DNA of 64,000 nt, taken from Thalia democratica. Taxonomy: Eukaryota. The notes beneath the pieces were generated by a model that did not search any database, was not told the DNA's origin, and saw only the letters and a program-made list of their open reading frames with translations. A program made the position numbers and the translations under genes. The stretch lies in the NCBI GenBank assembly GCA_965202585.1, contig OZ241827.1, positions 10,726,001-10,790,000 on the forward strand. The letters run 5' to 3'. Of this stretch, positions 44,701 through 64,000 are shown in pieces. Every line of letters starts with the position of its first letter. The stretch's first letter is position 1.

Positions 44701-47700
44701 GACCTGATTAAACTTTTTTAACTAGTCAAGAAAGTCTTATTCAACATAAATTAATCTTAACTTACGCTTGTAAAGCCTAGATTTTAATTTAAACCATTAT
44801 GATATCTAAAACTTAATATATAAAAAAATTAAAGAAATTACAAACTACAAAGAGAATGATCATCTTGAATGTCAAAACATATTAATGAGTAGTATCAGAG
44901 TTTTGTAAAATTAATACAAATTTAAATCTAATCAAAATTTTTGAAAAATTTTCATCAACATTGATTTTTTTTTCGATGAAAAGTGTAAACAAGGACAGAT
45001 AAATCTAGTTACAATCAGTCATTATTAACTTATCAGTACTTGAACCTTGTCAATTTTGTCACAATTTATACCTTGACTTAAAATTGGTATCTTTTTACTT
45101 TAGGTCGTAATATTTACAAAGTTTCAATCAATCATCGTTGTTTTATCTCAATCTTTATTATAGAGATGTATCAAAAAACATAATTAATAACTTTTTTAAA
45201 CTTAAAAAAATAGACTGAATTTATTTAGTTGTTTTTTTAAGCATCTTATAGTATACAAACCAATCTATCACTACTATTTATCGTAGAATCTTGTCAAAAC
45301 AAAAGTTATTTACATAATAACTCGTCAACCTAGCATTGTTGAAGTCAACTTTTACAAAGTTCTACCGTCTAAGATAGTGTTCTATATCTATATATTTACG
45401 ATCAATCACTTAAGTGGTAAGAAATAAAGCCTACTACGTTTACTAACTGCTTAATGTTATTCATCAGTTTTCTAAATCATTTTATACTATTTCATTGAAT
45501 AATTAATCATTGTATTTATTTTAAGAATCTAACTCTCTAGTTGAATTAATCATTTTTATCTTATCAATAAGAATATTTTTTAATCTTCATACAATGTAAT
45601 TTTTGCAACTTTTTTTTTGTATGATTTGTTCGAAAAGATGTAGATATGATAAATCATTACCTGCATCGGCCTCCCTGGCTGATTGTATCAGTAATGTCCC
45701 GTCGGCCAAAACTCGAACCCTACCGTCCAACTGAATCGATGCCCTGATAGTTAGTATCATTTAAAGTTACAACAATCGCAATTTATAACTTTGTTGATAT
45801 CACAAAAGTACATTTAGCTATTATTTAATTATTTTAAGATTATAAAGTTGTTTGTTCTCATAATGTTGTAGTAATAACAGCAGTTTAAATATACTAAGTA
45901 AAAGTTTTATCTTTCAATATTTAACCATAATTTATCTTTTATTTAAAAAAATTAGTTTATTCGTATTTGTTACAAATTGCTGTAAAAACAGTGTGTCACC
46001 TAATATAATACGAGGTATTGAGATTCTACTTAATTTTCACTTTATAATGTAAACTTTATAACTTTTCAGGTAAAAAATTCACAATTTGAAAAGTTTGTCA
46101 ATTTTTATTATAAATATCTTACCCATTAGATTTCCAAATAGTTTTGAGAGTTGGGGTGTAAAATACTTTTTAATTTTTTAGGTTATATAAAAACCAAATA
46201 CTTTATTCTTAATGGTAAACATCGTTCATATTATTTTATTATTCATTATAAATAAACATACCCGTTAAAATTCCAGGTAATTTCGGGTGTTGGGGACCCG
46301 CTCGCCTGACACTTGAACCTGATTATATGGCCTTGTGCGACTTCTGCATTGTGGGGAGGGACTTCTATTGAGGGTTCGACTGAAAAAATTAACTTCTAGT
46401 TTAAATTTAATTAGGTACTTTTTACTTTGCTTTGACTTGAAACTTTGAATTCGTTAAAGCTAAATAAGATAAAGTGGAGTGTATAGATAAATGAAACAAA
46501 AATAACTTATTTATCTTTAATATTTTGTAAAATAAAGCTGCAGACGTTTTTTATTTGTTTGCAACAGTAACAACCGACATTGTAATAACTTTAAAGTGTC
46601 AAGAAAAAAAAAAATTGTGAGCTATTTCAAAATACAAAATAAAAACGAATTATTTTATTCATATGATTATTTTTTTTTTATTGTTTTTAATGTTTTGTGA
46701 TGTAACACTTAAGTTTATAAATATTTCTATGACGCAACAAACCATCGGAACTTCCGTCGCATGTGAACTGCTCGAGCGGAACGTCCGCCAGCTCGTGATT
46801 GGTCACGTGACGCGGGGTGACGCACTTTGCAAGCAGTATGACGTCATCGTGAACTTCTCCCCACTGACGCAACCACGCCAGGTTGCAGTCGCACTGAAGG
46901 GGATTCCCTCCCAGTTGGCTGTAGGTAAGTTTTAGTTTAAAAAATAAGAAGTTTAGAAAAACTTATTACATATAGGGGTTGGATTGATCAACATTTTAAG
47001 CTAAAATAACCTTTGTATAGCTGGTGTAAAGTTGTTTCACTTTAAAACATTATTATTTTTTTTTATTTCTTAAAATAGTTTTCCTCACTAATACTATTTA
47101 ACACAGAAAAATGGTTAAAAAGGTAAATTAAATTTAAAAAAAATAAACCTGTTAGATTAGGGGCTAGAACTATAGTCTTTTTTAAGTTAAAGTAACGACT
47201 AAACACTTTCCCATTTGCCTGAACAGTTATTTGGTTTCAAAGTAATGTTTGATTTTTATTAAAACTTTCATAAATTTTCTACTCTTATGTTGATACTCAA
47301 GATTGTCAACTTTAGTTGTCTGAGAAGTAGAAGGATGATTTTTAGATACATGAAATATAAGTATATAGTTATCATCATAAACATTTATTAGCTGCGTGAC
47401 TCAGCTGCCTGAGGAGGTGTTGATGATATTAAGCTGTATTTATTAAGCATATGTGCACTAAACAAGTTATTTATACTGCATAACTTGGCTTAACTGTTTT
47501 GCTTAATAATTGAGAAACAAAAAAATTCTTTCTCTAAAAAACGTTAATACTTAACACTCAACAGTATAAAAGCAGTTGTTGTAAGTAGAAATCATCACGC
47601 TTTTTATTTTATTTTTGATCATTTTAATTGTTTTTAAGTCTATTATTTAAAGAAAGTTTTTTTTTTACAAGAAGCTTTACATAAAATTAAGAAAACCAAA

Positions 47701-50700
47701 AATAGCATTGAACGAGTTTATTGTTTCGAAAGGGTTTACAAAGTATTTTTGACATTAAATCACTAAACAACTCACGTTTTTGTAAAATGAATTAAACATC
47801 GAATTACGTATTACACGAAAATCTAATTTGTAGTAGGTCTTATTTGTTTGCAAAAAATCAAAAAGTACAAAAATTTGTGTGTAGGTATTAAAACTTACAT
47901 TGAATATTTAAACACAAAATATTTTTTAACTGGTTAAGATACTTAAGTTACAAAGGGATTAAGTAATTATGGTAGGAAATAGAACAATAAAATCCAATAA
48001 TTTTTACAATTATATTGAGCTTAAAACAAATAAACACAGTTATGTCGTTACAAAAATAACTTCAATTCCCTTAAGAGCGTAGATTAATTTAAAAAAAAAC
48101 GTTAACAATACAACGTTCAGAAAGAACATGGCACGATTTACATTATAGTTACGTAATAACCGACTATGCCTTAAACAATTATCTGGATATTTTGAATGTT
48201 GAACTTTCCACTAGTTGATTGACATGGATAATCTGACATGGATTAGTAGAAGTGAAGTTCTACAGATGAACGGAAAATAATAAAAATCAGTGTGAGAATA
48301 TCTTTAATTAATAAATTTTGGGTTGTTTTTAAATATTTATCTGTTGCGGTTTTTTTTTTATATTACGTCCTAACAGTGAGTTGTTTCTAAAGAACTATCG
48401 CTATGTAAATTTTAATTTTAAATAATATTTAAATATGCTAATATTGGTTAGTATTGTCCTAAATTTGGATTCAGCTATACTATTTTTAAAAGCCACATTT
48501 ATATATATATACCTAACTGGTTTACTTAACTTCGGTTATTTTTATTTTAAGCATTTTTGATTTAAAACTATCTATTCATGCCAAAACTAGCTAATATTTT
48601 GTAAGTTCAAATTAAGTTCAGCATATATTTTTTTTTAAACATTGACAAAAACCGTTGAGACACAAACAAACATTTAGGTTGGAATTCGCTCACGAGTTTG
48701 GATTAAATTTTTGTAAACAAAATAATTTCACGTACGATTTTGCACGTGTATTTGTGTGTACATTAATAATTATCTATTTGTTGACAAATGATGTAATGTT
48801 GTGCAGAAATGCGTAATTGCATGAACTAGCTCAAGTGGGTTTATAAATGCTTAAAGCGACAAACATTACAAAACCTTTTAAAACGTTTATGAAATTTTTT
48901 TCTGTGATTTGTATTAGAATTAAGATAAAAGTTGTCAGCAAAAAGACAGATGTTTTATGAAATTTCGAGCAAAAATTTTTACGTAGTTTTTTTTATAAAA
49001 ATATGTGTAAATAAAGAACGAAAAGAATAAGAAAGTTCTAAAACATAACATTTTTTGCAGAAAATTAACTTTAGTAAATTTTGAAGCAAATATTTTACAA
49101 GGTTTTAAAGATAAAAATGTACAAATCAAAGTAAAAAGAATAAAAAAGCTCTAAAACACAAAATTTTAAAACTTTCACAGCATCTAAACCACATTAAAGC
49201 TCAACTTCAAAAAAGTCGAAATAATCGTGTTAGCAGAGGCTCAGAAAACCCAATTTAATTTCTGTGATTTCAGCTGAAGATTACAACTGTTCGGATTACA
49301 AAACTGATTACAACTTTCTCAATACTTTTGTAGCTATAAGCCTGGCTGTTTTACCGCTTAATTATCTCATTTTCTACAAATTGCGCCCATGCAAATTGGC
49401 TACCAAATTACTTATTTGTGTGTCTCAATAAGTAATGATGATTTACTGTTTTGTTTTTGAGATGAAAATTGAAACTTTAATCTAATTTAGTGCTTTTGGA
49501 TGATTACAATGTCTTAGAGGAAAGAAAAGTTTTGAGCTAACGTATAGCAGAAAGTTTCACACTAAATTTTTTAAATTAAGAAACATTTTCAAATAATAAG
49601 AAGTAGATGGTATTTGTTTGTCATATTTTTATTTTAGTTTTTAAATTAAATTATATCTAAACACCCAGATTTAAGTTGATCGCGTGTCTAAAAGCAGAAA
49701 GGTATAGTTTTTTAAGATATTTCATTATTTTTTATTTATTTTATTTTTTTCCAAAACTTACACTTTGTGTATGCTTTCCAGTCTTGAAAAAATTCGAGTT
49801 GGCAAAGTTGTCAGTCGGTTGTTTGAAAGAAACCTGAAAAAAAAAAAGTTTTGATAACAATACACTGTAAACAGTGTGCTGAATTTGTAAGCTTAAAACT
49901 TATATTGTGAATACATACGTTGTAAAAGTGTTTAGATTCTGGTGTAAGCTTTTGCATAAGTTTCAGGTAAATATCCAAGTTGAGCTTAATAACTTTTAAA
50001 CTCGATTTCAAACAAAAGTTAAAAGATCTAAAGTAAAAAAAACAAGTTACACAGAAAACATTTATTTAGCTTCTTAGATGTAACTTTGTCTAAAACTAAT
50101 AAAAATTAAAACCTTAAATCATATACTAGTAAAAACAAAATGATAAGTAAGTAAAAAATTTTTAAGTCTACAAATACATTACTTACAATCTTTCTAATTT
50201 GTTCAATGGCCAGAAAGTCGTAGGAGCTATTGAAACTATCTCATTGGCGTGCAGATATCTGAAAAAATTATAACGTTGCTAAAAACTTAAGTGTAACATG
50301 AACTTTAATGCAACAAAACTATTAGCAAACTGGCAAATGTTTGTTTTGTTCATACTTAGATTCTTAAATTCATTTAGGAGAACAGAGATACATTAAGTTT
50401 AGTTTTTATTTTACACCATATGCACAAAAAGAACATCAAAAACAAACAAAAAACATAATCGAATTAGCTCGTTAAATTTTTAAAACTGGAATTTTGATAA
50501 TAAGAGAGTTAAAATTTAATAAAATTAAACCAGTGTCACTATCTTTTAAGGTCTTTAATATTTTTCTTTAATATTCAAGTTAAAAACAAAACTCACAGTT
50601 GTTTTAGCGAAGTGAGACTTCTTAAGCTGCGCTTGTGAATTGACTTAATTCTGTTTTCGTACAAGTACCTGTAAAATTAAAAGTTTGGAAATTACGTGTT

Positions 50701-53700
50701 TGTGTTGGGATTAGGCGAATTTAGGGTGCGGTGACCCCATTACAAAGTCGCTCGCTTTTAAAATTAGAACTCCCCTTTCATCATGTCTTTTGTGCCCAGC
50801 TATTAAATCTTTGATGCAAGACAAAGGCGTAAGAGTTCACGCATTCGGAAATTATTTTTTACTTAAAGCTTTTTTTTGAGCTGTTTACTGGTTTTATTGA
50901 CCTTTTGAACTAAGTGAAACGCTTTTGTTCGGCTTAGAGTTTAATCTGCTCGATTTTAGTTTTGCGCAGAAATGTTTTTGATGTGCAAAATTTATACTTA
51001 TAAGCATAAAGTAAGTTGTAATTTAGTTTTTAGTTAAGCTTAAGATAACTTGTTTCGAATAAAAAATCTTTAAAAAAAATTTTACCGTGAATAACTATAT
51101 AAAATTTATAAAGTACAGTTAGTTTCCAAAATTAATGCAAAAAAACTAAATTTTTCAACAACAACTAAAAATATTAATTATGTGTTTCAATAAATTTTAC
51201 ACACAAATTCAACTATAAATCCAAGCTTACTTAAACACAGCTTAAATTAAAGATAAAGACAGAATTTAATAATTATTAATTAGTTTAGCAAAAACAAAAC
51301 ACTACTTGTTTATAATTACTTTTTATATATCGTTTTAACTTATTAAAAGTTTAAACTACGTTATCATTTATTTTAACAAACTGAAGTATTTAAGATGTAT
51401 AATTTAGTCTTTACTGTTTCCAAAAAAGAAATTAATCATATTGAAAGTTTAAGATATAGATAAAAAAAACATTAAACTTACAAGTATTGCAGGTTGTTTA
51501 GTCCGTCGAAGGAAAGTTCTCCAATTCCCCTTATTTCGTTGTGGTCAAGAAGTCTGTAAAATGTTTAATTTTGTGAGAAAGTTTGTGTGATTGAGACGTA
51601 AACACAATCCACAGCTCAGTCGGCTGTACAACCGCAATTTCAGAATACACACAATGTGGTTGCATACAGAAATATTTGAAAAACAAAACGTGCTTAGCAA
51701 ATAAAGACATTTCATAAAAAAGTTTAAGTTTTACAAACTTATGTGTGATCATTGACAAAAAAGTATGAAAAATATAAAAATAACTGAAAAAAAAGCCTAG
51801 TCTAAGATAAGCAAGTTTAAAACAATTTTAATAAAAAGACAAACAACTCTTAATAAATGATAACATATCTAAAAGGCTAAATATAAGTTCAACTTCAGAA
51901 TACACATAACATTGGTTACATTACAAACAGGAAAAACGTCTTACAAATAAAAAGTGCCGGATAAAAAAAGTTTATTATCATTAAGCTTATAAGTTTCATA
52001 GAACTATGTACAAACAACAGTAAAAATATGTTTGAAAATAAGAAAAAAAAACCATTAAAAAAATAGTTTGAGATAAGCAAGTTTTGAAAAGTTGATAAAA
52101 AGATAAATAACTTTTAAATATTGATAGTGTTTCAAATTACTAAATATAAATTAAAGTGTACTAATATAACATCATCTCTTTCAAAGTTAAAAGTCAAAGC
52201 ATCTAATTTACAAAACTAAAAGAAATCTACATGCGTATATACATAATCAATGAAATTGAAAAGTTACAAGTTGTTACTCTTCATTGAGACAAACTCTACT
52301 GTCACGACAAGAGAATGTTTTTAAGAGGCTTCGTCTAGACATAAATTCTACTTGGTAGCAACGAAATAAACTATTTAAAACGCTTCAAGTTTGTTCAGTT
52401 ATACTGGAGGTTCTATTGTTTGTTTTTGTTTATTCATGCGCAGTCAAGACAGCGGGTTTGTAAACAAACAGAAGCTGATACGCACTGTTGCATATTAAAA
52501 AATAAATCCTTTTATGGCTTTGTTTATTTGAAAGTTTCAGAAAGCTTGATTTGGTAAGTTGCTTTGTGTATTGCAAAGTAACGCACTTACATTTCATGGT
52601 TGGGTTTGTAACTAAATCTTAAAGTTGAAATTTGATAGAATTTTTCGTTTAAAATAAAAACAAATTTTAAGTAGTGTGCTTTTACAAGTCTCTAAACTAT
52701 ATAAATTAGCTTAAATTTTTTTTTCATTGAAATAATTAAGTTGCAAAAAATCAAAAAAACATTTTAAATTTTGACAGTTATAATACTTTTTTATTTGTTT
52801 TAAAACTAAATAAGCTTTTAACAAAATATCAGCAGTAAATTATTTGATGTTAACGAGATTGACAGGTGAGTATTGCTGTGAGTTACTACAAAAAAGTTTT
52901 TAAAGATCAGTGGGCAGATTATCTGGGAGATTAACCAAGATTGTGTGAATTCCACAACTTGCCAGAAGAATGTTAATTGTGCCAAGTTTTACATAAAAAC
53001 TGAAGATTGTTTACATTGCAGCTGTCAGTAAGCGCCAAATAAAAATTTAACGTAAACATTACGAACTTTTAAACTATTTCAAATTATATATTAGGCTTGT
53101 TAAGTAGTTTCAAGCGCTAAATAGTTTACAGTGAATATTTAAGGAATTCATACTTGCGGTTATTAAGAAATATTTTCACACTTGTTGACGTTTGCAAGGC
53201 TTATTGCTGCATTTATTGGTATTTTTACGAGCCTGCCTTAAAACTTTTACTTTATTTAGAGCAACTATTTATTATTTTTGCTGAATAGTGTTTTGTTTAA
53301 ATTATTACCATAATTTAATATTGCAGCTTATATTAATGTTTTAATATTTCCTGAATTTTGATATGATGTTAACAAAAATGTTCTTTATAAACAAACAACA
53401 AAATAGGGTGAGTTTGTTACACTACCATCAAGTAAACACTGAAGTATTTTAATTAGTTTCACGACTCTCGAGCTAACTTGAAAAAAAACTGGACTTCAAT
53501 AAAACTTAATATAGTGTAGTTATAACCAGGCAAGATGTGGTTTTAATGCGAACTGCAACCGCAACTTCCTACTTTGAAAATCTCCGGTGCCCGGGATTAA
53601 AGAAACCATTTGTTTGAATGCGGGGCGGAAAATATATATTTAATAGGATTATTTAGCTGGAAAATTCTTAATTTGCAGACTGTATCAAACCAAAAACATT

Positions 53701-56700
53701 TAAGTTGCTTACTAAAGCTACAGGCAAACTTTTGTGCCTGGCCATGACAATTGTCAATGAAGGTATTTTTCTCCACCAAACTAAATAAATTAGCCCAATG
53801 GCACTGTTGAGTTACATTGTTTAAAATAAAATTCTTGTAATTGAAGCTGCTGCAAAAAACTAAAATTAGCAAAAAAATTTGCACTTGTAAATTAGTTTCG
53901 AAATGTTACCTTTCTTTACTTTCCATTAATTATAAACAGATTAAAGAAACAAAATAAACTTATAAGTTTTTTAAATGACTATTTAAAAAACAAAAACTGT
54001 TTGTGAATATTTGTATCAAACATTAAACATTTTTCAAAACGGTCTGAACACGTAAGTTGAGATATATAATAAAATAAAGACTGATAAAATAGAAAGAAAA
54101 GGCTGAAAAGATAACAAATACGTGTAATACCTTTTTAGTTTTACCTAATCAGCAAATTTTATTTGTTAAATCATTTTTTATCAACGTTTCAAAGAAGTGC
54201 TTTAATGTGGATAACTTGTAAATTAGCAATCAATCAATTACTGAATAGTTATCTTTATGCTGCTTTAATCAAATTAATCTTTCGGCAGGAAACAAGCTAA
54301 TTTTGTTAACTTGTGCTAAAATCACAAAAAAAAGGTCAAATGAGAAAAATTAAGTTGAAAATAACTAAACAAGGGCAAAAACTGATTATAAAACGTACTT
54401 TAAAACAAGTATTTAAATCTTTTTTAAAATAAAACAAAAATAAGTTGGATTTTTTTATTTTTTTGCTTTATTCCTTTTAAGCATAAGGTTGTTGATTTAT
54501 AAACGTCCTAGTTTTTTTTAAGTTGTCACATTTCAAATCGTTATAACTAAAAAAAATAAATATCTAATAAAAGAATAGAACAAACTTCTTACTCTAAATG
54601 GTATAAATTTCAAATAGTAATGAATAAAATAAAGAAAAATTTGGAGAGTTCTTTTAATAACGTTTGATGAGGCTACCTTAAAAAATTCTTTTAACAAACT
54701 TAAATAAAATATAGATTTTAGCTACATGCTATAAGATCTTAAATTGCAAAAAAAAAACTTTTAAAACTTATAAGAATCAAACTGAGAAGAAAGTAAGTTG
54801 TAGAATGTTGAACAACTTTATTTATATATATAATTAACAAACTAACAAAGATGTGAGATTGTAGAATGGTGAAAAGTGTCTTGGTGGAAGCTGCCTAATA
54901 TTGTTGTTCCTCAAGTCACTGAAAATTAAATTAAATTTGTAAATTATTAACATAACTTTTTTAAACGTGTACTTAGTTTTTAGTCTTTTATAGTTAACTG
55001 TTTATAGATTACTGTTGGTTTAATTTATTTTTAAATTTTTGTTACTCCCTTCAGAAAATTCATTCAACATTTCTCTTAACTAAAGTTTAATACTAATTTC
55101 TTACCTAACCTCTATTTTTTTGTATATTATATAGTCAGAACTTTATAAATTCCTAAATTCATTTAACTGTTGCACAAACTCAATATCAGCAAACAGTTCA
55201 TTCAGTTCAAAGCATGTTGTATATTGAATTATTTCATTGTTGTTTTAATAATTCCCTTTATGACAACTTCATCTTGATAAGGCAAAAACCTTTTAATCTT
55301 TTCAGTAATAACAGCTTTCACATCTTTTAAAAGATCTTTTAAAAACACAAAACAACTTTGAAGTCTGAAAGCGTCAAAAGCTTCATTGTACTGTAAAGAC
55401 AACAAACTCAACAAATATTGAAAGTATTTACTAACTAAACGCCATCGCTCAATTAAATTTCAATTAAGCCATTGAAAAGTGAATCTTTATACTTCCAGGT
55501 GCAAAACTCGCTTCAGATGTGGTAGTTATCTTGTTTGTGATAAACAGCCAAGGTAATGATGATTTCTTTTAAAACTAAAAGGTATGCACTTTAATTTTAT
55601 TTTAATTAAGAACAGAGCCTCAGTTGTGGTAGTTACCTTGTTTGTGGTGAAAATAAAAAGGCTGCTGTAGAAAGTACAAAGTCAATGTAAAAAGCTTGAT
55701 GGTTCAGAAAACGATTTATGCTACTTTGCAGCTTAAACGTGGGATTATACCGTTCAAGGTAAATAAAAAAGGCTACTGTGAAAATGATTTAAATGTGAAT
55801 GTAATGACTGCGCTTTTAAAGCTGCCCTTTTCGAAAAATTGCCTTTTAAACTTTTATAGAAACCTTTGATGTGGCTTGTTAATGTTTACGGTAAAATAAA
55901 AAGTTAGGTTTGAAGATTATTTAGTTTCTAAAGTTTATACTTTGAAACAATACGAGCGTTTAGTATTTTTTTGTTTTGTGTACACAAGATCACATCAAAA
56001 CGGTTTAAAATCTCTCACGACCAAGATAGATTAAGAACATTTAGGTCAGCGTGGATTATAAGCAAGATATTAATTGATAAGAGTCCATCTAACGAGATAA
56101 CGAATGACACTAATCAAACATTCTATGATCCGCAAACAAGAGTTAAATTTTGAAGTTTTGTTTTTGAGACGTTGTCACATGTAATCTTTAAATGAGCCGA
56201 AATGTTTGTATAAAGCAATTGTGTCGTCTAATTTTAAGTAAGTTTGACAAAAGATTATACAAACAAAAACTAAGTTCGAAAAATATAATTTTTATTTTGA
56301 AAAAGCAATGAATTTTAAATAACTAATTTATTAAAAAAAATTGATAGAAAATATAATTTTTTTGTTACTCTTGATTTAATATATTTCAACAATTTTTTTT
56401 TATTATCATAAAAATTAAGACTTTTATAAAGAAACAGCTGGTTCTATAGAAGCTAAACCAATAATTACGCACAAACTCAATGTTTAAATTTCGTGTTAAT
56501 ACATATATTCCTAGCTTTTAGTTGTACGTGGCAAAAAATCCCACAACTTCCAAGACTGGGAACAACTTGTAAAACTTTTAAATTAAATTAACTAACAATC
56601 GCATTTTCAAATTAACGCAAGCTCAGTTGTGTTTGCAAAAATGTTAATGAATTAGCAGACAAATTCAGCTAGTTTAAAATTGACCAGAAATATTTTAAAG

Positions 56701-59700
56701 TACACGGAAAATACACGATTTCATTCCAAATTTCCCAGACACAACTACACCTACTGGTACAGCTAGCAGAATTTTTATTTTGTCAGAAGCTTTTATTATT
56801 TTTAAAGCTTCCTGTATGGAAAGGGCACTTAAAAGCAAATATAACTCATTGTGTTTTATAATAAAGCTACTGAATCTTTTCAACAAAGTGCTTTTTTTAT
56901 TGTTAACAAAACGCCAGCACAAGCCAATTAAACATTATAACAGCAAAGCAAATAGTCCTGATCAAATAACTGATTTTTACAATCAGCTTTTTTAATATTG
57001 TAATTGTAGTAATAATGTTTGCCAATTTTGTCATAAAAACATATTTAAAAAAAACTTTGTACGCACTACATATTAATATCAAATGCAATTTCTTTGAATA
57101 AACCAAAGTACAAATAAGTGTCAAAAGATCATTTATTTGAATCAATTTGCAGCTAAATTACACGCCAGAAGAGAGCATATATAATTTTAAATTGCACACA
57201 TTCTTATGTGCAATATAACAATTTTAAAATTTTCTTGGTAATTGATAACAATCTTCATTTTAATAAAACTTAAAAGTGATTTTTTTTTAACTTATTTCAA
57301 TAAATTTCAAAGAAAACAAACTATTTTAACTGTTTTAGAGTGCTTAAAACAACTCAACTTACTATAAAAAAACAATAAAGTATTTTCGCTTATTTATTGA
57401 AAATCAAACTTATTTTCCTTACATAGTGGCAGGCCTTCTTTTCAAGTTGGCCACGGCCTTCAGACCGTACCTGAGGCATTTGACCCTGGCCCCGTAACAA
57501 TCGCAGTTTTGGGGGCAGTTTCTGTGGGGACCCCTCCGGTGCAGGTGGGGCCTGTGGCGACGCTGGCAGTTGCCTAGCAACAGCAACGTTGCCAACACGA
57601 CAAATGTTAATAATCTCATCTGAACAAATTAGATTGCTGAAAGAAATATGTTTATCTATACATGTTTTTTTTAATAATACCAAAACTGAAGTTTTTTTTT
57701 TCACTAGAACAAAGTATTTTTATAAACAAATAATTTTTATGTGTTGTACTCAAAAGTTTATAACTCTACATAACAAAAACGTATGAAATATTTTAAAGTT
57801 AATACTTGTTTTTAAGCTTATTTTTCAAAAGTAATAAAACACTTGCTAGAAACAAACACTTTCAACAACTGGCGTTAAATTACGTTAATAAAAACGTTGA
57901 AAATTTCTTTTTTTCTCAGCATTTAAAGCTGACAGATGTTTCAGTTTATAATCTCTCATAACTTTGCATCAACAAAAAGCAAATTACTTGTCTAATTTGA
58001 AGTGAATGTCTGCCTTTTCGAATGCAAACAAAGCTCTTCACTTTGAAACTTTGCTCTGTATTTCTTTAACTAAGTAAACAAAACAAAACGCAAACAATGA
58101 AAATTTTCATAAAAACTAGCAGACAACTGTGAAACGAACAAATGTGTTAGCAAATAAAACGTATGTATTTGTTCTATGACATTAAAACTAAAATAATGCA
58201 AATAAAAAGTTTAAAAAAGCACTGCTTCAACCTAATACGTGGTACAAACATTATCACTTTGAACTTTAAGCAAAGTGCACTAAAGTTTAATAACTGAAAA
58301 AACACTTTCTTTTCACAAAAACTCAAACTTAATACGAAAGAAAAATATCATTTTTTTATCAAAATGCCAGATTTTTTTCTAACTGAAACTGATACTGCAG
58401 CATCACAGTTGCCACGCAACCTACTTTTATTTATCAGCACGCAGTATTAATTCTTGTCACTTACACACAGGAAAACATAAAACTTTTTCGCCAACAAACG
58501 AGAGGTGTTTTAATTTCGCCCCTCTTCAACGCAATCACTTAAAAGCTTCTTTTCTTTCCCCTTTTTTGTTCTTTTTTTTTATTTGCACTTCCTGGCTTTT
58601 CGGCTCCAGCACCCTGTGGCCGCTTAAAACACCAATACATACTTGGTTGGATGCGCCGAACAATTAAAATTTTGAGGGCCTATTTCGGCACTCGACTTAT
58701 TTATAATCTGCTGAAACGTCTGCAATCACTTTTTTGCACACACAAAAATGATTGCAGATATTTTAATCTGGAAAAAAAATCTTTTAAATACTTTCAATAA
58801 AACACTAAAAGTCTAATACTTTCACTCCTGCTAGATAATTATAAAAAAAAACATCAAATCTGTCTGAACGACAGCGAGCCGCGAGCCGCAAAAAAACTTG
58901 TTGAAAAAAAAGTTCAGTCTACCGGCGTCGAAGCACTGAAGCGAGTTTTCGTGAAACCATCGAAGCATGACGACTTCCCTCGCTGCCCTTCTCGCTTTCC
59001 TGCTCGTCGGCCGCCTCCTACACAACGCTACATGTCGCGCACCTCCCCCGACGAATTTCTCCTCGAAAACGAGATGTTTGCATTCGTGCGCTGCTGCTTG
59101 TCAGCATTGATGCTTTTGTTCGGTTTGCTTGTTGAGATTTTTCGTACAAAGAAAATGACAGCCAGAAGATTTGAACTTTCTGTTTATTGCTCACTAGGCC
59201 ATACAAAACAAACTTGGTTTTATCTGTCTGCAAAACTAAAATAAGGCTTTTTTGTTGCGTTAAAATACATATAAACTTAAAACAAAAAGCTTCTTTTCTT
59301 ACAACAAATGAACGCGCTAATTTTTGGTAAAACAAGAAACTTTTGCCTCTCCTTAAATTTATACCCTCAAAAGTTGCTCTTTTTTCTTCGGTTTTTTTGG
59401 TGGTTTTTCAGCCGCTAATTAGAGGGAAACGTAAACAACAATTCCATTGTATTTCGGTTAACCGGCTTTAAATCAACTTGTTTGTCTTTGCACTTAAACT
59501 AAGTTGATCTTTTAGGTTTTCTTGGACGCGAAACAATAAAATTTAAGTGATGGCATGAAACGTAATTAAAAAGTTGTCAGGTTATGCTCGCCATACTTTG
59601 ACGGATCTGAGAATTGCAGTTTGTTAATTGCATTGATGTGAGAATGAACTTTTTACGAGCAATCGGATACAAATAATACGATTGTTATATACTTTTCAGA

Positions 59701-62700
59701 CCTCTTTTACAATATAATTGAATTATTAGTTGATTACTTATTCAACTGATTCTATGAACATTTTATGATTTCAATGTTTGATATACTAGCCTATGTTGTT
59801 TTGCGGTAATAATTAATAAAACATGTTTGTTATCCAATATTCCTTACTTGTTAACCACATATACGTAATTAAATAATTTAATTTATTCCGGTAGCTGTAA
59901 TTGTGATTAAGTAAGATTTAGCTAAATTATTAGCTTTGATCTTACAAACGAGCTTTTACGAGAACAAAATATAAACTTAAAAGAATTATCTGTTGTTAAA
60001 TGTTAAAAAATTTTAATTTTAATTTGTTCAAAATAGTTCATTGGTACATAACTGTTTATAATTGCTAGTGGTAAGCAGAACATTTTTCGTTTAAAATTTA
60101 TTATGACGTAGTAAAAAACTGCTAATTTTTAAAGTCGTTTGATTTTTTACCATCAAAATATAGAAAAACTTATCAACTCAAACTGAAAATAAAATAAAAA
60201 AACTTCTAACACACAGCAAAATTATGAAACAACCTTTAACTGAGTAAAATAAATTCAACAACAATTTTACATAGCATACTTCTAAACAAAACAACATTGT
60301 TTTTTAATAACTTGTTGTATTGTATGAAAATACATGTTTTGCAGTCCAATGTTTAATAATTTGAATACAAACTTTTTTCTACCTTCATACCTTTCAGTTT
60401 CAATAAATTCAGCTTAAGTGGATTTTAAAGTAATCTCTGGAGAATAGAACTTAACTCTAAGAATTAAACTGCTAACTTTGAGATTATCGGTAAATTACTA
60501 ACTACTTAACCGTCAGGTCACACAGTTCACATATTCTTCTAAAAAATTTCATTCGTAAATATTAAAATTTAAATACGTTAACGAGTTTAAGAAATACTTC
60601 CAGGAAGTATGTACTAATTGTAGTGTTAAAGTATCCATTACAGTGTTAAATTATGTAAGTTTTATTTTGCAAGCAATTACAACTTGGTGCTTTACCAAAT
60701 AATTGCTATTTATGTTTGATATAACAACAACAATAATATTTTCAAACAATGTTTTTTTTGGATCAAGTAAAAAAAATAAGCATTAATTTACGTTACTTAT
60801 ATTGTTCTGACTTTATTAAAACGACAAAAAATAATAACAAATTCGTCAACGTTTTTTAAGACGTAAGTAGAAACAAAAGCTTTTTAAATTATACATCTAT
60901 CTAGAAGATTTATGTAAACATATATAATAAACTTATATAAAATATAAATCTTTTTTAGAAGCTGTGAATATATGAATATAGTGCAATAAATGTTTCATAA
61001 CTAGTTTTTCAAAAAATTGTCAGCTTTTGAAACATTTTAAAAATAGTAACTTTTTATAAAAAGAACTTTAACAAAATAGCAATATATTTTGTTTGCTGTA
61101 TAGAAGACTTTTGTACTCTATTCAAAATAAAAGTATAAGGTTTTTGGTACAAAAACACTATTCCGCAGTAATTTTTTTTTTCAAACTTATTTTATCCAGC
61201 TGGTTTAACGAACTTTTGAAGTACTAAGCACTCGCATAAATTAAAGTCTCAAGCATACTTTGAGCAAAAACATTATTTTATGAAAAATTACTCATCTAAA
61301 AGATCTACGATTTTTTTTAAATGTCTATTTATTATTTTTCTAAAACAATCTGTAAAAGTTTTATATTATGTATACAAAACATAAAGGGATTAAACTATTC
61401 TAAGTATCTGATTTTCTTAATAATTATTTTCTTGTAAGATTTTTAAATAAGCATGAAGCTGCTATGATATTTAAACATGTATACTTGAACAAAATTAAAC
61501 CATAGCTATAAAAAAAAGGCATTTTTGAACTTTAAAGCATATTTTATAAATAGTTTTTAAGTTCTTGATTACAAATTAGTTATAAAACTTTAAATAAAAA
61601 GACAAGTGTTACTTATTTCAGTAACATTATTTTATATAAATATATTAGCCGTTAAACTTTGAAGAAAATATAGTTTAATTTCATTAATTAAAGTATACTT
61701 ATGTCAAGTATTAAATATTTATTAGGTGGTAAATCAACACAAAAGTATGCAATATACAAATAATTTTCAAATATTTTTGTTTACCGAGACAAATAAGCCG
61801 CTTATTCCAAGAACAAGCTCAATCAATCATTTTCATAGCTAGCTTTGATCGCGCCGACAAAACTTATAGCAAAGTTTTTAGACTTTAATCTTTTTACTTT
61901 AAAATTTACGTAAACAACTTTTGCTACAATACATCAAACATTATTTTAGATATCCTTAAGTAATGTTGTTCATACGTTTTAAGGTTAAAAAAGTTTATAA
62001 CTTTGACTGTCAGATATTTTAATACTAAACTGAAGTTAAAAGTTTTTAGTTATAAAAAAAGTCAATCTGTTAAAATTACTATTTCGAACAGCGTCTTAAA
62101 AGCGATAAAATAAAAGTCTAAAAATACAATTTAGCATCAAAGAATTTCCTTTATATTTCCAATGTTGGATTACTGCTAATCTTGCGAACATTGTCAAAGT
62201 TTGATCAATCGACCAGAAGAGATAAAATTTACTAAATATTTTGCCAAAGATAAAACTTCACATTAAAGTCTAGACTAGAAAATAAAATGACCAGTAATAA
62301 TTGCTTCATTTGTCATTCATTATTATTTAAAATTGTTGGAATTTAACTGAAAATTAGACATGCAATTCTGACGTTTGTTTTAAAAAGCTTTTTTTGTCTA
62401 AAAGTTCAGTGTTTTTGTCAAAATATAAAACTTAAATGATACACTACTTTAGAAACAACATAAAAATGGGTGTTTTCACTACACACAAAGGTTAAATTCC
62501 AACACATAAACAACATATTTTAAAAGTATATAGCGTGTTCGACATACAGCAAGTTTAATTTGTCCATTAATATCTTGTTTTTAGTTTTTGACTATTGTTA
62601 TCACACTTTAGCTTCTAATTTTTAAAGCAAACACCAAATGTTATCAGCATACTAAACAAAATAACTTCAAAGAGCAAATAAAAGCACATATTTTAAATGT

Positions 62701-63380
62701 TTGCTTCCACTTAATCCAGCCAATAGAAAGGCTTCGAAAAACTTTTGTGTGTTTGCACAAGTATATTGCTTTGCAAAATATTCAGCACAAGTTGAAAGCG
62801 CGGTAATTTTTCTTGCAAATATGATAAGTCGACAAATTATTTTTAAATTTGCACGCTCAATAACTCAATCAGGTTATTTTCAATTTTTACTTTTCTGACT
62901 GGTAGATATAAGGCTACTTATCTTTTTGATAAACTACGTAATGCTCATTACGGCAAGTGCTCAGGGTGAAAAGTGTAGAGGCAATTTACATTTTTCAAAA
63001 GCAATTTCAGTTTTTTTTTAGTGCAAACTAGACCAAACCAAATATCCACTTGATTATTTTATTAGTTATTAGATTAAAATTTTGTTGCTTAATTTATTCA
63101 CTTTTGAGGCTTTTGGTGTTTCAAAAAAAAGTACAATCACAAAAACCCTAAAATTAACAAAAAATCACGATCAACAAACTAACATGGTACTCGGTCGGAA
63201 CCTGAGGTAGGATATAAGGTGCATGCCGTTCCTGGAACACCTGACGGTGGATCCCCTGTAGCAGGAGCAGTACCTGGGGCAGCGGTGCCTGTGCGCCCTA
63301 TACCTTCTGTTTTGCGCCTCATTGCAGGTAATTAACGTTGTGGCGATGATAAGTAGCAGTTGAAAGGTGGACGGCTTCAT
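5551..63380 (-). CDS. PXDN: Peroxidasin, whole gene model: 35 exons, 4818 nt, 1605 aa; SP-LRRNT-5xLRR-LRRCT-5xIg-linker-haem peroxidase-coiled coil
   Basis: Every exon listed below has AG/GT boundaries and matching phases, and the exon lengths sum to a multiple of 3 ending in TAA. The LRR+Ig+peroxidase architecture is diagnostic of peroxidasin. Catalytic motifs [27 protein letters not shown] and QRGRDH are intact. Confidence 0.96.
5982..6226 (-). CDS. PXDN: PXDN exon 34 (end of peroxidase domain)
   Basis: 245 nt; [41 protein letters not shown]...[31 protein letters not shown]. Confidence 0.95.
7427..7587 (-). CDS. PXDN: PXDN exon 33
   Basis: 161 nt; [53 protein letters not shown](W). Confidence 0.96.
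8535..8741 (-). CDS. PXDN: PXDN exon 32
   Basis: 207 nt; [69 protein letters not shown]. Confidence 0.96.
11129..11261 (-). CDS. PXDN: PXDN exon 31
   Basis: 133 nt; [44 protein letters not shown]. Confidence 0.95.
12209..12351 (-). CDS. PXDN: PXDN exon 30 (proximal His)
   Basis: 143 nt; [47 protein letters not shown]. Confidence 0.96.
13001..13153 (-). CDS. PXDN: PXDN exon 29
   Basis: 153 nt; [51 protein letters not shown]. Confidence 0.96.
13413..13528 (-). CDS. PXDN: PXDN exon 28 (distal Arg, ester Glu)
   Basis: 116 nt; [40 protein letters not shown] second in-frame acceptor lies 9 nt inside the exon. Confidence 0.92.
14083..14248 (-). CDS. PXDN: PXDN exon 27 (Ca-binding [12 protein letters not shown])
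   Basis: 166 nt; [55 protein letters not shown]. Donor GTACGT; a weaker in-frame GTACTG lies 6 nt upstream. Confidence 0.93.
15573..15736 (-). CDS. PXDN: PXDN exon 26 (His/Gly-rich loop, REQINQ)
   Basis: 164 nt; [55 protein letters not shown]. Confidence 0.95.
17342..17586 (-). CDS. PXDN: PXDN exon 25 (distal Gln/Asp/His)
   Basis: 245 nt; LPSPRSVS...[18 protein letters not shown]...[15 protein letters not shown]. Confidence 0.96.
18482..18619 (-). CDS. PXDN: PXDN exon 24 (start of peroxidase domain)
   Basis: 138 nt; [45 protein letters not shown]. Confidence 0.96.
18953..19130 (-). CDS. PXDN: PXDN exon 23
   Basis: 178 nt; [59 protein letters not shown]. The ANLSGC..NC...C cysteines are conserved. 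Confidence 0.92.
20327..20618. mobile_element. hAT MITE, 292 bp
   Basis: TIRs CAGGGTTTTCAAA / CAGGGCTTACCAAA; perfect 8-bp TSD ATCTAGAT (20319-20326 and 20619-20626); internal 19-bp tandem unit GGCCTATAAGCATTAAAGA x3. Confidence 0.9.
20666..20829 (-). CDS. PXDN: PXDN exon 22 (propeptide-like region with RRARR)
   Basis: 164 nt; [54 protein letters not shown], resembling peroxidasin DLLALFRYP...RAGEIF. Confidence 0.91.
21660..22905. repeat. Unclassified interspersed repeat, copy B (same orientation as copy A)
   Basis: Same three blocks as 1555-2800, in the same order; boundaries approximate. Confidence 0.75.
23915..24011 (-). CDS. PXDN: PXDN exon 21 (pre-peroxidase helix)
   Basis: 97 nt; [32 protein letters not shown], resembling the peroxidasin VDRAINST segment. 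Confidence 0.9.
24160..24276 (-). CDS. PXDN: PXDN exon 20 (inserted acidic linker ending in RSKR)
   Basis: 117 nt, phase 1/1, TTTTAG|...|GTTAGT; [39 protein letters not shown]. No family homology recognised; the call rests on the splice sites, open frame and phase fit. Confidence 0.72.
25355..25465 (-). CDS. PXDN: PXDN exon 19 (end of Ig5 plus inserted linker)
   Basis: 111 nt, phase 1/1; [43 protein letters not shown] supplies the last Ig strand. Confidence 0.88.
25669..25788 (-). CDS. PXDN: PXDN exon 18 (Ig5, C-terminal half)
   Basis: 120 nt; [40 protein letters not shown]. Confidence 0.91.
26642..26772 (-). CDS. PXDN: PXDN exon 17 (Ig5, N-terminal half)
   Basis: 131 nt; [43 protein letters not shown]. 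Confidence 0.91.
27803..31205 (-). mobile_element. hAT DNA transposon (Charlie/SPIN-like), 3403 bp, with a decayed transposase
   Basis: TIRs CAGGGATCGGCAAAC / CAGGGGTCGGCAGGC; multiple subterminal GGCCCGCG repeats at both ends; perfect 8-bp TSD ATTTAGAA (27795-27802 and 31206-31213). Confidence 0.93.
29380..29700 (-). pseudogene. Decayed hAT transposase core (GTF2IRD2/SPIN-like)
   Basis: Minus strand reads [36 protein letters not shown] (compare DESTD..D.AQL.IFIRGV...EE.L...M..T) and [12 protein letters not shown] (compare HCIIHQEALCAK), with in-frame stops. The remnant probably extends further on both sides. Confidence 0.8.
31280..31586. repeat. Local tandem duplication of about 125-135 bp in intron 16
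   Basis: CTGACTACTA.TAAGCTAGAAAGTTTTTATTCGTATTT...CTCATAAATCTACCATCGGTTA occurs twice, about 178 nt apart. Confidence 0.85.
31615..31792 (-). CDS. PXDN: PXDN exon 16 (Ig4 C-terminal half, start of Ig5)
   Basis: 178 nt; [59 protein letters not shown]. Confidence 0.93.
31950..32202. repeat. Possible MITE remnant with 17-bp subterminal units
   Basis: TCGTGCAA(A/T)(A/T)TTGACCC-like unit x3 at 32146-32196 and an inverted AAAATTTGCACGA at 31956-31968. No TSD found. Confidence 0.4.
32438..32554 (-). CDS. PXDN: PXDN exon 15 (Ig4, N-terminal half)
   Basis: 117 nt; [39 protein letters not shown]. Confidence 0.93.
32899..33009 (-). CDS. PXDN: PXDN exon 14 (Ig3, C-terminal half)
   Basis: 111 nt; [37 protein letters not shown]. 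Confidence 0.92.
34848..35009 (-). CDS. PXDN: PXDN exon 13 (Ig3, N-terminal half)
   Basis: 162 nt; [53 protein letters not shown]. Confidence 0.94.
35312..35422 (-). CDS. PXDN: PXDN exon 12 (Ig2, C-terminal half)
   Basis: 111 nt; [37 protein letters not shown]. Confidence 0.93.
36060..36370. promoter_or_regulatory. Candidate intronic enhancer
   Basis: Non-coding island of higher GC containing five CACTT/AAGTG cores, two TAATCC and two GATAA motifs. Motif content only; no functional evidence. Confidence 0.35.
38319..38938. mobile_element. Tc1/mariner-superfamily (pogo/Tigger-like) MITE, 620 bp
   Basis: Perfect 25-bp TIR CAGTAGACTACCGCTTAAGTACGCA, TA on both flanks (38317-38318 and 38939-38940), subterminal GTGCGTAC repeats. 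Confidence 0.92.
39638..39763. repeat. Tandem duplication (period 71) spanning the exon 11 donor
   Basis: ATATTATGA.GTCATA.AAACGAA.CTAACA.ATCATGACGAAGTAGTTGGGATC occurs twice. Confidence 0.88.
39739..39865 (-). CDS. PXDN: PXDN exon 11 (Ig2)
   Basis: 127 nt; [42 protein letters not shown]. Confidence 0.92.
41718..41836 (-). CDS. PXDN: PXDN exon 10 (end of Ig1, start of Ig2)
   Basis: 119 nt, TTGCAG|GTGAGT...|GTGAGT; [40 protein letters not shown]. Confidence 0.92.
45661..45743 (-). CDS. PXDN: PXDN exon 9 (Ig1, middle)
   Basis: 83 nt; [27 protein letters not shown]. Confidence 0.92.
46262..46379 (-). CDS. PXDN: PXDN exon 8 (Ig1, N-terminal half)
   Basis: 118 nt; [38 protein letters not shown]. 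Confidence 0.93.
46743..46918 (-). CDS. PXDN: PXDN exon 7 (LRRCT)
   Basis: 176 nt; [19 protein letters not shown]...AKCVTPRHV...FTCDGSSD, matching the LRRCT pattern NPxxCDC...C...C. Confidence 0.94.
49762..49833 (-). CDS. PXDN: PXDN exon 6 (LRR5)
   Basis: 72 nt, TTTCAG|...|GTAAGT; (L)[23 protein letters not shown]. Confidence 0.94.
50187..50258 (-). CDS. PXDN: PXDN exon 5 (LRR4)
   Basis: 72 nt, TTTCAG|...|GTAAGT; (L)[23 protein letters not shown]. Confidence 0.94.
50597..50668 (-). CDS. PXDN: PXDN exon 4 (LRR3)
   Basis: 72 nt, TTACAG|...|GTGAGT; (L)[23 protein letters not shown]. Confidence 0.94.
51482..51553 (-). CDS. PXDN: PXDN exon 3 (LRR2)
   Basis: 72 nt, TTACAG|...|GTAAGT; (L)[23 protein letters not shown]. 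Confidence 0.94.
54847..54918 (-). CDS. PXDN: PXDN exon 2 (LRR1)
   Basis: 72 nt, TTTCAG|...|GTTAGT; (I)[23 protein letters not shown]. Confidence 0.93.
57423..57619 (-). CDS. PXDN: PXDN exon 1b: proximal alternative first coding exon, signal peptide + LRRNT
   Basis: [48 protein letters not shown]...RPAT. 197 nt, ends AT|GTAAGG (phase 2), in frame with exon 2. Confidence 0.88.
58643..58705 (-). promoter_or_regulatory. Candidate TATA box plus short non-coding leader exon for exon 1b
   Basis: Minus-strand TATAAATA at 58705-58698, followed by a donor-like AA|GTATGT at 58642; exon 1b is preceded by acceptor-like AGs. Confidence 0.3.
63184..63380 (-). CDS. PXDN: PXDN exon 1a: distal first coding exon, signal peptide + LRRNT
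   Basis: [48 protein letters not shown]...RPST. 197 nt, ends AT|GTTAGT (phase 2), in frame with exon 2. Confidence 0.85.
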
Positions 63381-64000
63381 TGCATGGCAGTATCAGGTGG
63401 AGATTGTTTGACTTTTTTTTTAATATTTAATTAAACAGTTTGTATGCTTAGAAACTCTGGATAAACAGTTACTATAATACTAATCAGCTTTTAAAAAACT
63501 TTCTTAAAATATTTGATCTCAACTAAAGTCTAATTTTTTATGTGCATTGTATATTTTTTCAGGTTTATAAAAAAAGAATAGTCTAAAAATAATGTTTAAC
63601 TAAAATTAATATCAAACCTTTTAGTTAAACGAGTTTTTGTTAATGTTCTATTAAACCTGTTGTTAAGTAGCAAATTAACAAAACTACTCATCAAAAAATC
63701 TTAAACACAAAAACTTTTTAAATTGACCGTATTCTTCCGCTTATTTGATTTTACTTTGCCTGTGACGTAATTTTAAAAGTTATTTATAACTCAAAATACC
63801 TTGCGCTTGAAATGCAACAGTCAATCAACTAAATCCACGTTAACTTTCTAAATTATCACTAAATCAAAACTGCTAGAAACTTTACATCTTAAAAACTATC
63901 TTATTTGTAAAAAAAAACTCTAACAACGGCTGCAACCGGTCAAAATAATCTCTTAAAAAACGTTTGTCTTTAACGATGTATTTGCACAGCTAAGCTTTTG

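What the first reader, a model, noticed from the sequence alone, without database searches (positions are those of the whole stretch)
57423..63380. Two mutually exclusive signal-peptide+LRRNT first exons for one peroxidasin
Seen: two exons of identical coding length (197 nt) and phase (both end AT|GT). Each encodes its own signal peptide, an Arg/His-rich stretch ([11 protein letters not shown] vs [16 protein letters not shown]) and a complete LRRNT ([15 protein letters not shown] vs [14 protein letters not shown]). They are 5.6 kb apart with no LRR exon found between them, and both join exon 2 in frame (AT|T = Ile). Including both is non-productive: joining 1a to either acceptor before 1b (57619 or 57636) shifts the frame and hits a stop. 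Their sequences are highly diverged, yet the frame, cysteines and length are intact, which suggests an old duplication kept by selection. Known: vertebrate PXDN uses one such exon. Inference: two promoters produce two secreted isoforms with different N-caps, for example basement-membrane versus tunic/endostyle/immune use.
Basis: partly seen in the sequence, partly recalled or inferred. Interest (0 to 1): 0.78.

Follow-up and report, generated by a model that had tools for sequence, protein, structure and literature searches.

The report
Duplicated start exon in tunicate peroxidasin
A planktonic tunicate's peroxidasin gene has two intact, old, diverged copies of its first coding exon (secretion signal plus leucine-rich-repeat cap); sequence statistics suggest both are kept by selection, but no RNA data show the upstream copy is used.

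Summary
Exon 1a (63380-63184, minus strand) and exon 1b (57619-57423) are each 197 nt. Each runs from ATG to AT|GT and encodes a signal peptide, an Arg/His-rich stretch and a four-cysteine LRRNT. Both fit the phase of the 72-nt LRR exon 2 (54918-54847). No LRR exon lies between them. The two exons are each other's closest relatives. They are equally far from outgroup peroxidasins. Synonymous sites are saturated (pS 0.79, pN 0.34). Both keep GC3 above 0.7 in introns of about 22% GC. A neutral-decay simulation almost never keeps 1a's ATG, open frame, cysteines and donor. Exon 1b resembles the single first exon of a distant relative that I traced on an ENA contig. That relative has no second copy between its upstream neighbour gene and exon 2, so the duplication is lineage-specific. 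Exon 1b has splice acceptors at -17 and 0, which fits spliced-leader trans-splicing. Exon 1a has none and looks promoter-proximal. Use of 1a is only inferred: I spent my one sequencing-run search on a 6-kb stretch that hides a 197-nt RNA. Best reading: alternative first exons, a new member of a known kind (0.5). Main rival: an orphaned, unused duplicate (0.3). The scan had noted this gene before, but not this feature.

The parts
63184..63380 (-). Exon 1a: ATG, signal peptide, [10 protein letters not shown] stretch, LRRNT ([15 protein letters not shown]), phase-2 end
   Evidence: GC 0.54 and GC3 0.74, against flanks of 0.24.
63176..63183 (-). Donor of exon 1a (gttagttt), identical in its intron part to exon 2's donor
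57423..57619 (-). Exon 1b: ATG, signal peptide, [16 protein letters not shown] stretch, LRRNT ([14 protein letters not shown]), phase-2 end, donor GTAAGG
   Evidence: All four variants seen in other haplotypes or organism B are synonymous. It is the better match to the relative's single first exon.
57620..57650 (-). Two acceptor-like sites (tttctttcag and tttgttcag) at 17 nt and 0 nt before the 1b ATG; candidate spliced-leader acceptor
   Evidence: The link to trans-splicing is inferred from earlier notes s1-317435 and s1-291954 and was not tested here.
58400..59400 (.). GC-rich island (up to 0.49 GC) between the two first exons, with a consensus donor TGT|GTAAGT at 58464-58459 on the minus strand; candidate promoter or non-coding leader for 1b
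   Evidence: No Rfam, tRNA or Pfam match.
54847..54918 (-). Exon 2, first LRR (72 nt, phase 2 to 2), the common acceptor for either first exon
49762..51553 (-). Four further 72-nt LRR exons (51553-51482, 50668-50597, 50258-50187, 49833-49762)
46756..46917 (-). LRRCT exon, followed by the Ig exons and, further down, the peroxidase exons of the same gene

Best explanation
Exons 1a and 1b are paralogous first coding exons of one peroxidasin gene. They arose by an old tandem duplication of exon 1 that is specific to this lineage. Exon 1b is the ancestral-type start. It is probably transcribed from the GC-rich island about 1 kb upstream and receives a spliced leader at the acceptor 17 nt before its ATG. 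Exon 1a lies 5.6 kb further upstream. It has no usable acceptor in front of it, so it would be the first exon of transcripts from a second, distal promoter, and its donor would have to skip 1b and join exon 2. The result would be two secreted peroxidasins that differ in signal peptide, basic stretch and the N-terminal cap of the LRR domain. In human PXDN the LRR domain binds laminin. Shown here: the anatomy, the homology, the age of the duplication, the signs of constraint on both copies, and the single exon in a relative. Inferred: transcription of 1a, the 1a-to-exon-2 junction, the two promoters, and the trans-splicing of 1b.
For: The exon anatomy and phase compatibility are confirmed. 1a and 1b are each other's best match (score 110) and share derived traits against all outgroups: Y after CxC, R-x-G after VxC, an RP[S/A]T end, and 197 nt rather than 200 nt. 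The duplication is old: pS 0.79 (saturated) with pN 0.34 over 34 codons. 1a has not decayed. Its GC3 is 0.74 in introns of about 0.24 GC. In a neutral simulation, ATG, open frame, four Cys and GT all survive in 0 of 3000 runs at p = 0.3-0.44 and in 0.3% at p = 0.2, and GC3 of 0.74 or more is never kept. 1a is no further from outgroups than 1b: 59/53/54 against 72/51/55. The 1a donor gttagttt equals the proven type used by exon 2. An LRRNT cap makes sense only when joined to LRRs, and exon 2 is the only in-phase LRR partner, because there is no LRR exon between 1a and 1b. 1b is under constraint: four of four variants are synonymous. Twin-promoter genes whose 1a/1b exons each encode a signal peptide are known, for example the IgLON genes (PMC5288359). 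The LRR domain of PXDN binds laminin (PMC10657184).
Against: There is no transcript evidence. The single run search listed no RNA holder, but a 197-nt exon is about 3% of the words of the 6-kb query, below the 5% needed for a holder. Protein word searches with 1a and 1b found nothing for either exon. The acceptors in front of 1b look as strong as real ones in this gene. A pre-mRNA starting at 1a should therefore often splice 1a to 1b and hit a stop. The metagenome relative X4 covers 29 of 30 bins of the stretch, and the one empty bin is the one that holds exon 1a. The distant relative has no second first exon, so the arrangement is not conserved widely. Only 620 nt upstream of 1a are visible, and no promoter feature was demonstrated there.
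Confidence: 0.5

Rival explanations
1. Exon 1a is an orphan. It would be the surviving first exon of an exon or gene duplicate that was under selection for most of its history, for example as part of a second tandem peroxidasin copy that was later deleted. It is now unused, or used only in non-productive 1a-1b-2 transcripts.
For: No RNA or protein evidence for 1a was found. Strong acceptors before 1b would trap the 1a donor and give a stop. The X4 relative shows no contig over exon 1a although it covers every other bin. The distant relative manages with one first exon. All signs of constraint measure the long-term average and cannot exclude a recent loss of function.
Against: Exon 1a shows no defect of any kind: ATG, frame, four Cys, signal peptide, exact length and donor are all intact, and GC3 is 0.74. 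The depth in organism A (about 71) looks like one contig with both haplotypes collapsed. That is a weak hint of low polymorphism in 1a. No trace of other exons of a lost copy lies between 1a and 1b.
Confidence: 0.3
2. There is one promoter upstream of 1a. The choice of start exon would then be made by competition between cis-splicing (1a donor to exon 2) and spliced-leader trans-splicing at the acceptor 17 nt before the 1b ATG, which discards the 1a-containing outron.
For: 1b has a trans-splice-type acceptor at -17, and 1a has none. Earlier notes say this genome uses the Ciona-type spliced leader and has acceptors 17-19 nt before ATGs.
Against: The GC-rich island with a consensus donor between the exons looks like a separate promoter or leader for 1b. 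Nothing was tested with RNA.
Confidence: 0.1
3. Exon 1a belongs to a different transcription unit: a separate small gene, or splicing to an LRR exon of another gene.
For: The window ends 620 nt upstream of 1a, so its context is unknown.
Against: No coding-like or LRR exon follows 1a before 1b on either strand. 1a's closest relative is 1b, and its phase and length fit exon 2 exactly.
Confidence: 0.06
4. The second copy is a chance ORF or an assembly artefact.
For: None beyond the lack of RNA data.
Against: The homology z-score is 13.9. A sharp GC island coincides with the exon. Contigs of organisms A and B cover the 1a bin. The divergence between 1a and 1b is far beyond anything allelic.
Confidence: 0.02

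Closest known systems
Peroxidasin (PXDN/Pxn) of other animals, including the relative traced on ENA contig ERZ25067590:ctg29775
   Same: The domain order is the same: signal peptide, LRRNT, 72-nt LRR exons, LRRCT, Ig, haem peroxidase. The phase-2 boundary between LRRNT and the first LRR is conserved in the relative.
   Different: Sea urchin, fish and insect proteins and the relative's gene have one N-terminus or first exon. Here there are two. Both are strongly diverged from the [17 protein letters not shown] consensus and lack the IP..VP motif.
Twin-promoter IgLON genes (Lsamp, Ntm, Opcml) with alternative first exons 1a/1b
   Same: Two alternative first exons, each encoding its own signal peptide and joined to common downstream exons (PMC5288359).
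   Different: In IgLONs the mature proteins are identical after signal-peptide cleavage. Here the mature N-terminus (basic stretch plus LRRNT cap) would differ. The IgLON isoforms are proven by transcripts; these are not.
Variable first-exon clusters (clustered protocadherins, UGT1A); comparison from my own knowledge, not checked here
   Same: Tandemly duplicated first exons, each with a promoter, a signal peptide and part of the functional domain, spliced to constant exons.
   Different: Only two copies are present here. The variable part is a 30-residue cap rather than a whole domain. The downstream copy carries an acceptor, probably for a spliced leader, which those systems lack.
Spliced-leader trans-spliced genes of tunicates (Ciona type)
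   Same: An AG acceptor with a pyrimidine tract sits 17 nt before the 1b ATG, as noted for other genes of this genome.
   Different: Addition of a leader at 57636 was not observed here. An upstream coding exon with a donor (1a) would turn the outron into an intron.

Membership tests
Peroxidasin gene | N-terminal LRR domain (LRRNT, LRRs, LRRCT) followed by Ig domains | tested here: met
   Five 72-nt LRR exons, an LRRCT exon and Ig exons lie on the minus strand.
Peroxidasin gene | Animal haem peroxidase domain downstream in the same gene | tested here: met
   PF03098 matches exons at 17307-17600 (1.3e-15) and 5941-6240 (1e-07). Full-length peroxidasins appear among the phmmer hits.
Peroxidasin gene | C-terminal von Willebrand factor type C domain | not tested
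   This lies outside the finding and was not examined.
LRRNT domain (PF01462) | Four-cysteine cap C-P-x2-C-x-C-x(n)-V-x-C directly before the first LRR | tested here: met
   Both exons carry the full pattern and align with the LRRNT of nine other peroxidasin N-termini. C34, P35, C38, C40, V46 and C48 are invariant.
LRRNT domain (PF01462) | Score above Pfam's gathering threshold | tested here: not met
   The scores are 13.4 bits (1a) and 17.5 bits (1b) against a cut-off of 25.8. The domain is truncated by the exon end, and the conserved IP motif is lost in both.
Genes with alternative (mutually exclusive) first coding exons | Each first exon is in phase with, and can be spliced to, the common second exon | tested here: met
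   Both end AT|GT, and exon 2 starts with T after an AG.
Genes with alternative (mutually exclusive) first coding exons | Both junctions are observed in transcripts, each with its own transcription start | not testable with these tools
No own-species proteins are in the libraries.
Spliced-leader trans-spliced mRNA (exon 1b) | The leader sequence is found joined at the acceptor upstream of the ATG | not tested
   Only the acceptor sequence at -17 was seen. No RNA reads were available.

The most novel reading that the evidence does not exclude
A single upstream promoter drives the gene. The cell would choose between two signal-peptide/LRR-cap exons by letting cis-splicing (1a donor to exon 2) compete with spliced-leader trans-splicing at the acceptor before 1b. 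The trans-splicing machinery would then act as an isoform switch for a secreted matrix enzyme.
Probability: 0.1. Interest if true: 0.6.

Novelty: new member of a known kind. Interest (0 to 1): 0.35.

Why it matters
If both exons are used, this tunicate makes two peroxidasins with different N-terminal caps on the LRR domain. In the human enzyme that domain binds laminin (PMC10657184). That would be a simple natural experiment on what the LRR cap and the tunicate-specific basic stretch do. It would also be a case where an upstream coding exon has to coexist with a probable spliced-leader acceptor. Alternative first exons made by exon duplication are a common and well-understood design, and the key fact, use of 1a, is unproven. 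The finding is therefore of moderate to low general interest.

Tried and rejected
RNA evidence. The one run search was made with the whole 6-kb stretch. That was a poor choice: a holder needs 5% of the words and each exon is about 3%, so 'no RNA holder' says nothing. The one read layout returned only DNA contigs. It did give four synonymous variants in 1b, but the rows for 1a were among the 429 rows not shown.

Protein word searches. Searches with the 1a ORF, the 1b exon and the LRRCT exon all returned nothing. The blank for 1a therefore carries no weight.

Exhaustive phmmer search. I ran it with a peroxidase exon. There was no own-species protein, and the best hits were 65-72% identical short ORFs on ENA contigs.

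Metagenome scans. Degenerate DNA patterns for the 1a and 1b cysteine motifs gave 0 hits each.

GC-rich island. Rfam, tRNA and Pfam searches found nothing.

Repeat search. No flanking similarity was found around the two exons. The bacterial-type promoter scan is not meaningful for a eukaryote.

Second relative.

Joined models. Searching or folding a joined 1a+exon 2 or 1b+exon 2 protein model was left out.

Full report
**What is there.** On the minus strand, exon 1a runs from the ATG at 63380 to ..CAT at 63184 and is followed by GTTAGT. Exon 1b runs from the ATG at 57619 to ..TAT at 57423 and is followed by GTAAGG. Both are 197 nt.
- 1a encodes [65 protein letters not shown].
- 1b encodes [65 protein letters not shown].

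Exon 2 begins at 54918 after ttttcag and reads (I)[23 protein letters not shown]. It is a 72-nt, phase-2 LRR exon, like four more at 51553, 50668, 50258 and 49833. These are followed by the LRRCT, Ig and haem-peroxidase exons. The gene is a peroxidasin of more than 50 kb. Both first exons have a signal-peptide-like hydrophobic core and plausible cleavage sites. Both have a weak Pfam LRRNT match, truncated by the exon end.

**Between and around the exons.** No LRR-like exon lies between 1a and 1b on either strand. The only GC-rich feature there is an island at 58400-59400. It has no Rfam, tRNA or Pfam match and carries a consensus donor TGT|GTAAGT at 58464. I read it as a candidate promoter or non-coding leader for 1b.

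Exon 1b is directly preceded by two acceptor-like sites, tttctttcag at -17 and tttgttcag at 0. They look as good as the real acceptors of this gene. Earlier notes of this scan say the genome is that of a planktonic tunicate with the Ciona-type spliced leader, and that acceptors 17-19 nt before ATGs recur in it. So 1b is probably trans-spliced. I did not test this.

Exon 1a has only an AG at -31 behind an A-run, so it looks like a promoter-proximal first exon. Joining 1a to either acceptor of 1b is non-productive. With the acceptor at 57619 the frame reads ATA TGA. With the acceptor at 57636 the frame stays open through 1b but ends in phase 0, so exon 2 starts with TGA.

**Relationship and age.** 1a and 1b are homologous: 44% identity over 36 aa, local score 110, z 13.9. 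Each is the other's best match. They share traits absent from all outgroups: Y after CxC, R-x-G after VxC, an RP[S/A]T end, and loss of the IP..VP motif. Over 34 alignable codons pS is 0.79 (saturated) and pN is 0.34. No flanking similarity remains. The duplication is therefore old but lineage-specific.

**Signs of constraint.**
- Both exons have GC3 of 0.71-0.74, while their flanks have 0.19-0.25 GC.
- I simulated neutral decay, starting from 1b with the intron base composition. ATG, open frame, four cysteines and the GT donor were all kept in 0 of 3000 runs at p = 0.3 or 0.44 and in 0.3% at p = 0.2. GC3 never stayed at 0.74 or more.
- 1a is no further from outgroups than 1b. Scores against the relative, sea urchin and fish are 59/53/54 for 1a and 72/51/55 for 1b. 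So 1a shows no excess divergence.
- The intron part of the 1a donor, gttagttt, is identical to that of exon 2.
- For 1b, contigs of a second haplotype and of organism B show four differences, at 57437, 57446, 57479 and 57500. All are third-position and synonymous.
Organisms A and B cover it. The marine-metagenome relative X4 covers 29 of 30 bins, and the empty bin is the one holding 1a. That is unexplained and may be a coverage gap.

**Comparison with a relative.** The own species is absent from the protein libraries. From the best phmmer hit (P0001, 70% identical over a peroxidase exon) I walked 68 kb upstream on ENA contig ERZ25067590:ctg29775.
- Its exon 2 (DLRFNRIRSIPSSTFRGMRNLNTL) is in the same phase as here.
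- Its only first exon (L008:2087-2286, 200 nt) encodes [66 protein letters not shown].
- No other Cx(2-4)CxC or LRRNT-like exon lies in its 15-kb intron 1. None lies in the 15 kb between exon 1 and the last exon of the upstream neighbour gene, L010:14580-15107.
- Its basic stretch RRGP.R.CP matches 1b.

So 1b is the ancestral-type exon and 1a is the added one. The Arg-rich stretch predates the duplication. It is absent from sea urchin, fish and insect peroxidasins.

**Interpretation.** An LRRNT cap is meaningful only when joined to LRRs. Exon 2 is the only in-phase LRR partner. 1a shows long-term constraint on exactly the residues that build the cap. The best reading is therefore that 1a is, or until recently was, an alternative first coding exon spliced to exon 2, with 1b as the main, probably trans-spliced start (confidence 0.5).

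The main rival is that 1a is an orphan that is no longer productively used (0.3). The sequence statistics average over a long history and cannot exclude recent loss. The strong acceptors before 1b would also tend to capture the 1a donor.

A variant with one promoter and competition between cis-splicing and trans-splicing is possible (0.1).

**Known parallels and novelty.** Twin-promoter genes whose 1a/1b exons each encode a signal peptide are well known, for example the IgLON genes (PMC5288359). Variable first-exon clusters are textbook cases (my own knowledge). I found no report of this design for peroxidasin. In human PXDN the LRR domain binds laminin (PMC10657184), which gives the two caps a conceivable functional meaning. 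This is a new member of a known kind, of moderate to low interest until RNA data show the 63184->54918 junction.

**Limits.** The absence of RNA holders is therefore uninformative.

Noticed in passing
window 58400-59400: A GC-rich, CpG-containing island (up to 0.49 GC) lies in the intron between 1a and 1b. It has a perfect donor TGT|GTAAGT at 58464-58459 on the minus strand and no Rfam, tRNA or Pfam match. It may be the promoter plus a non-coding leader exon for 1b.
   Followed up: partly
window 63201-63400 (read layout): The marine-metagenome relative X4 has contigs in 29 of 30 bins of the 6-kb stretch. The only empty bin is the one holding exon 1a. This could be a coverage gap, divergence above 20%, or absence of 1a in that relative.
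   Followed up: no
window 56741-56770 (-): A CTSRCSC motif resembling the peroxidasin LRRNT consensus CPSRCLC sits in the low-GC intron between 1b and exon 2, followed by no V-x-C. The E-values are at chance level (0.3-3), so it is probably chance.
   Followed up: partly
window 63377-63385 (-): A two-codon upstream ORF (ATG CAA TGA) overlaps the 1a start codon in an ATGA arrangement. Likewise, a 1a-to-57619 junction would place the 1a stop codon over the 1b ATG (ATATGA).
   Followed up: no
window 57540-57565 and 63290-63315 (-); L008:2160-2190: An Arg/His-rich stretch between signal peptide and LRRNT is shared by 1a, 1b and the distant relative (QRRRGPRS). It is absent from sea urchin, fish and insect peroxidasins. 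It contains R-x-x-R motifs, which could be convertase sites or a glycosaminoglycan-binding patch.
   Followed up: partly
L010:14580-15107 (-): In the relative, the gene upstream of peroxidasin on the same strand ends in a 175-aa exon with cysteine-rich repeats and a transmembrane segment. The 15-kb intron 1 of its peroxidasin is full of SINE-like repeats.
   Followed up: no
P0015 (ENA, 1415 aa): A peroxidasin-like protein from short, intron-poor ENA contigs lacks the LRR domain and starts with a His/Asn-rich stretch before its Ig domains.
   Followed up: no
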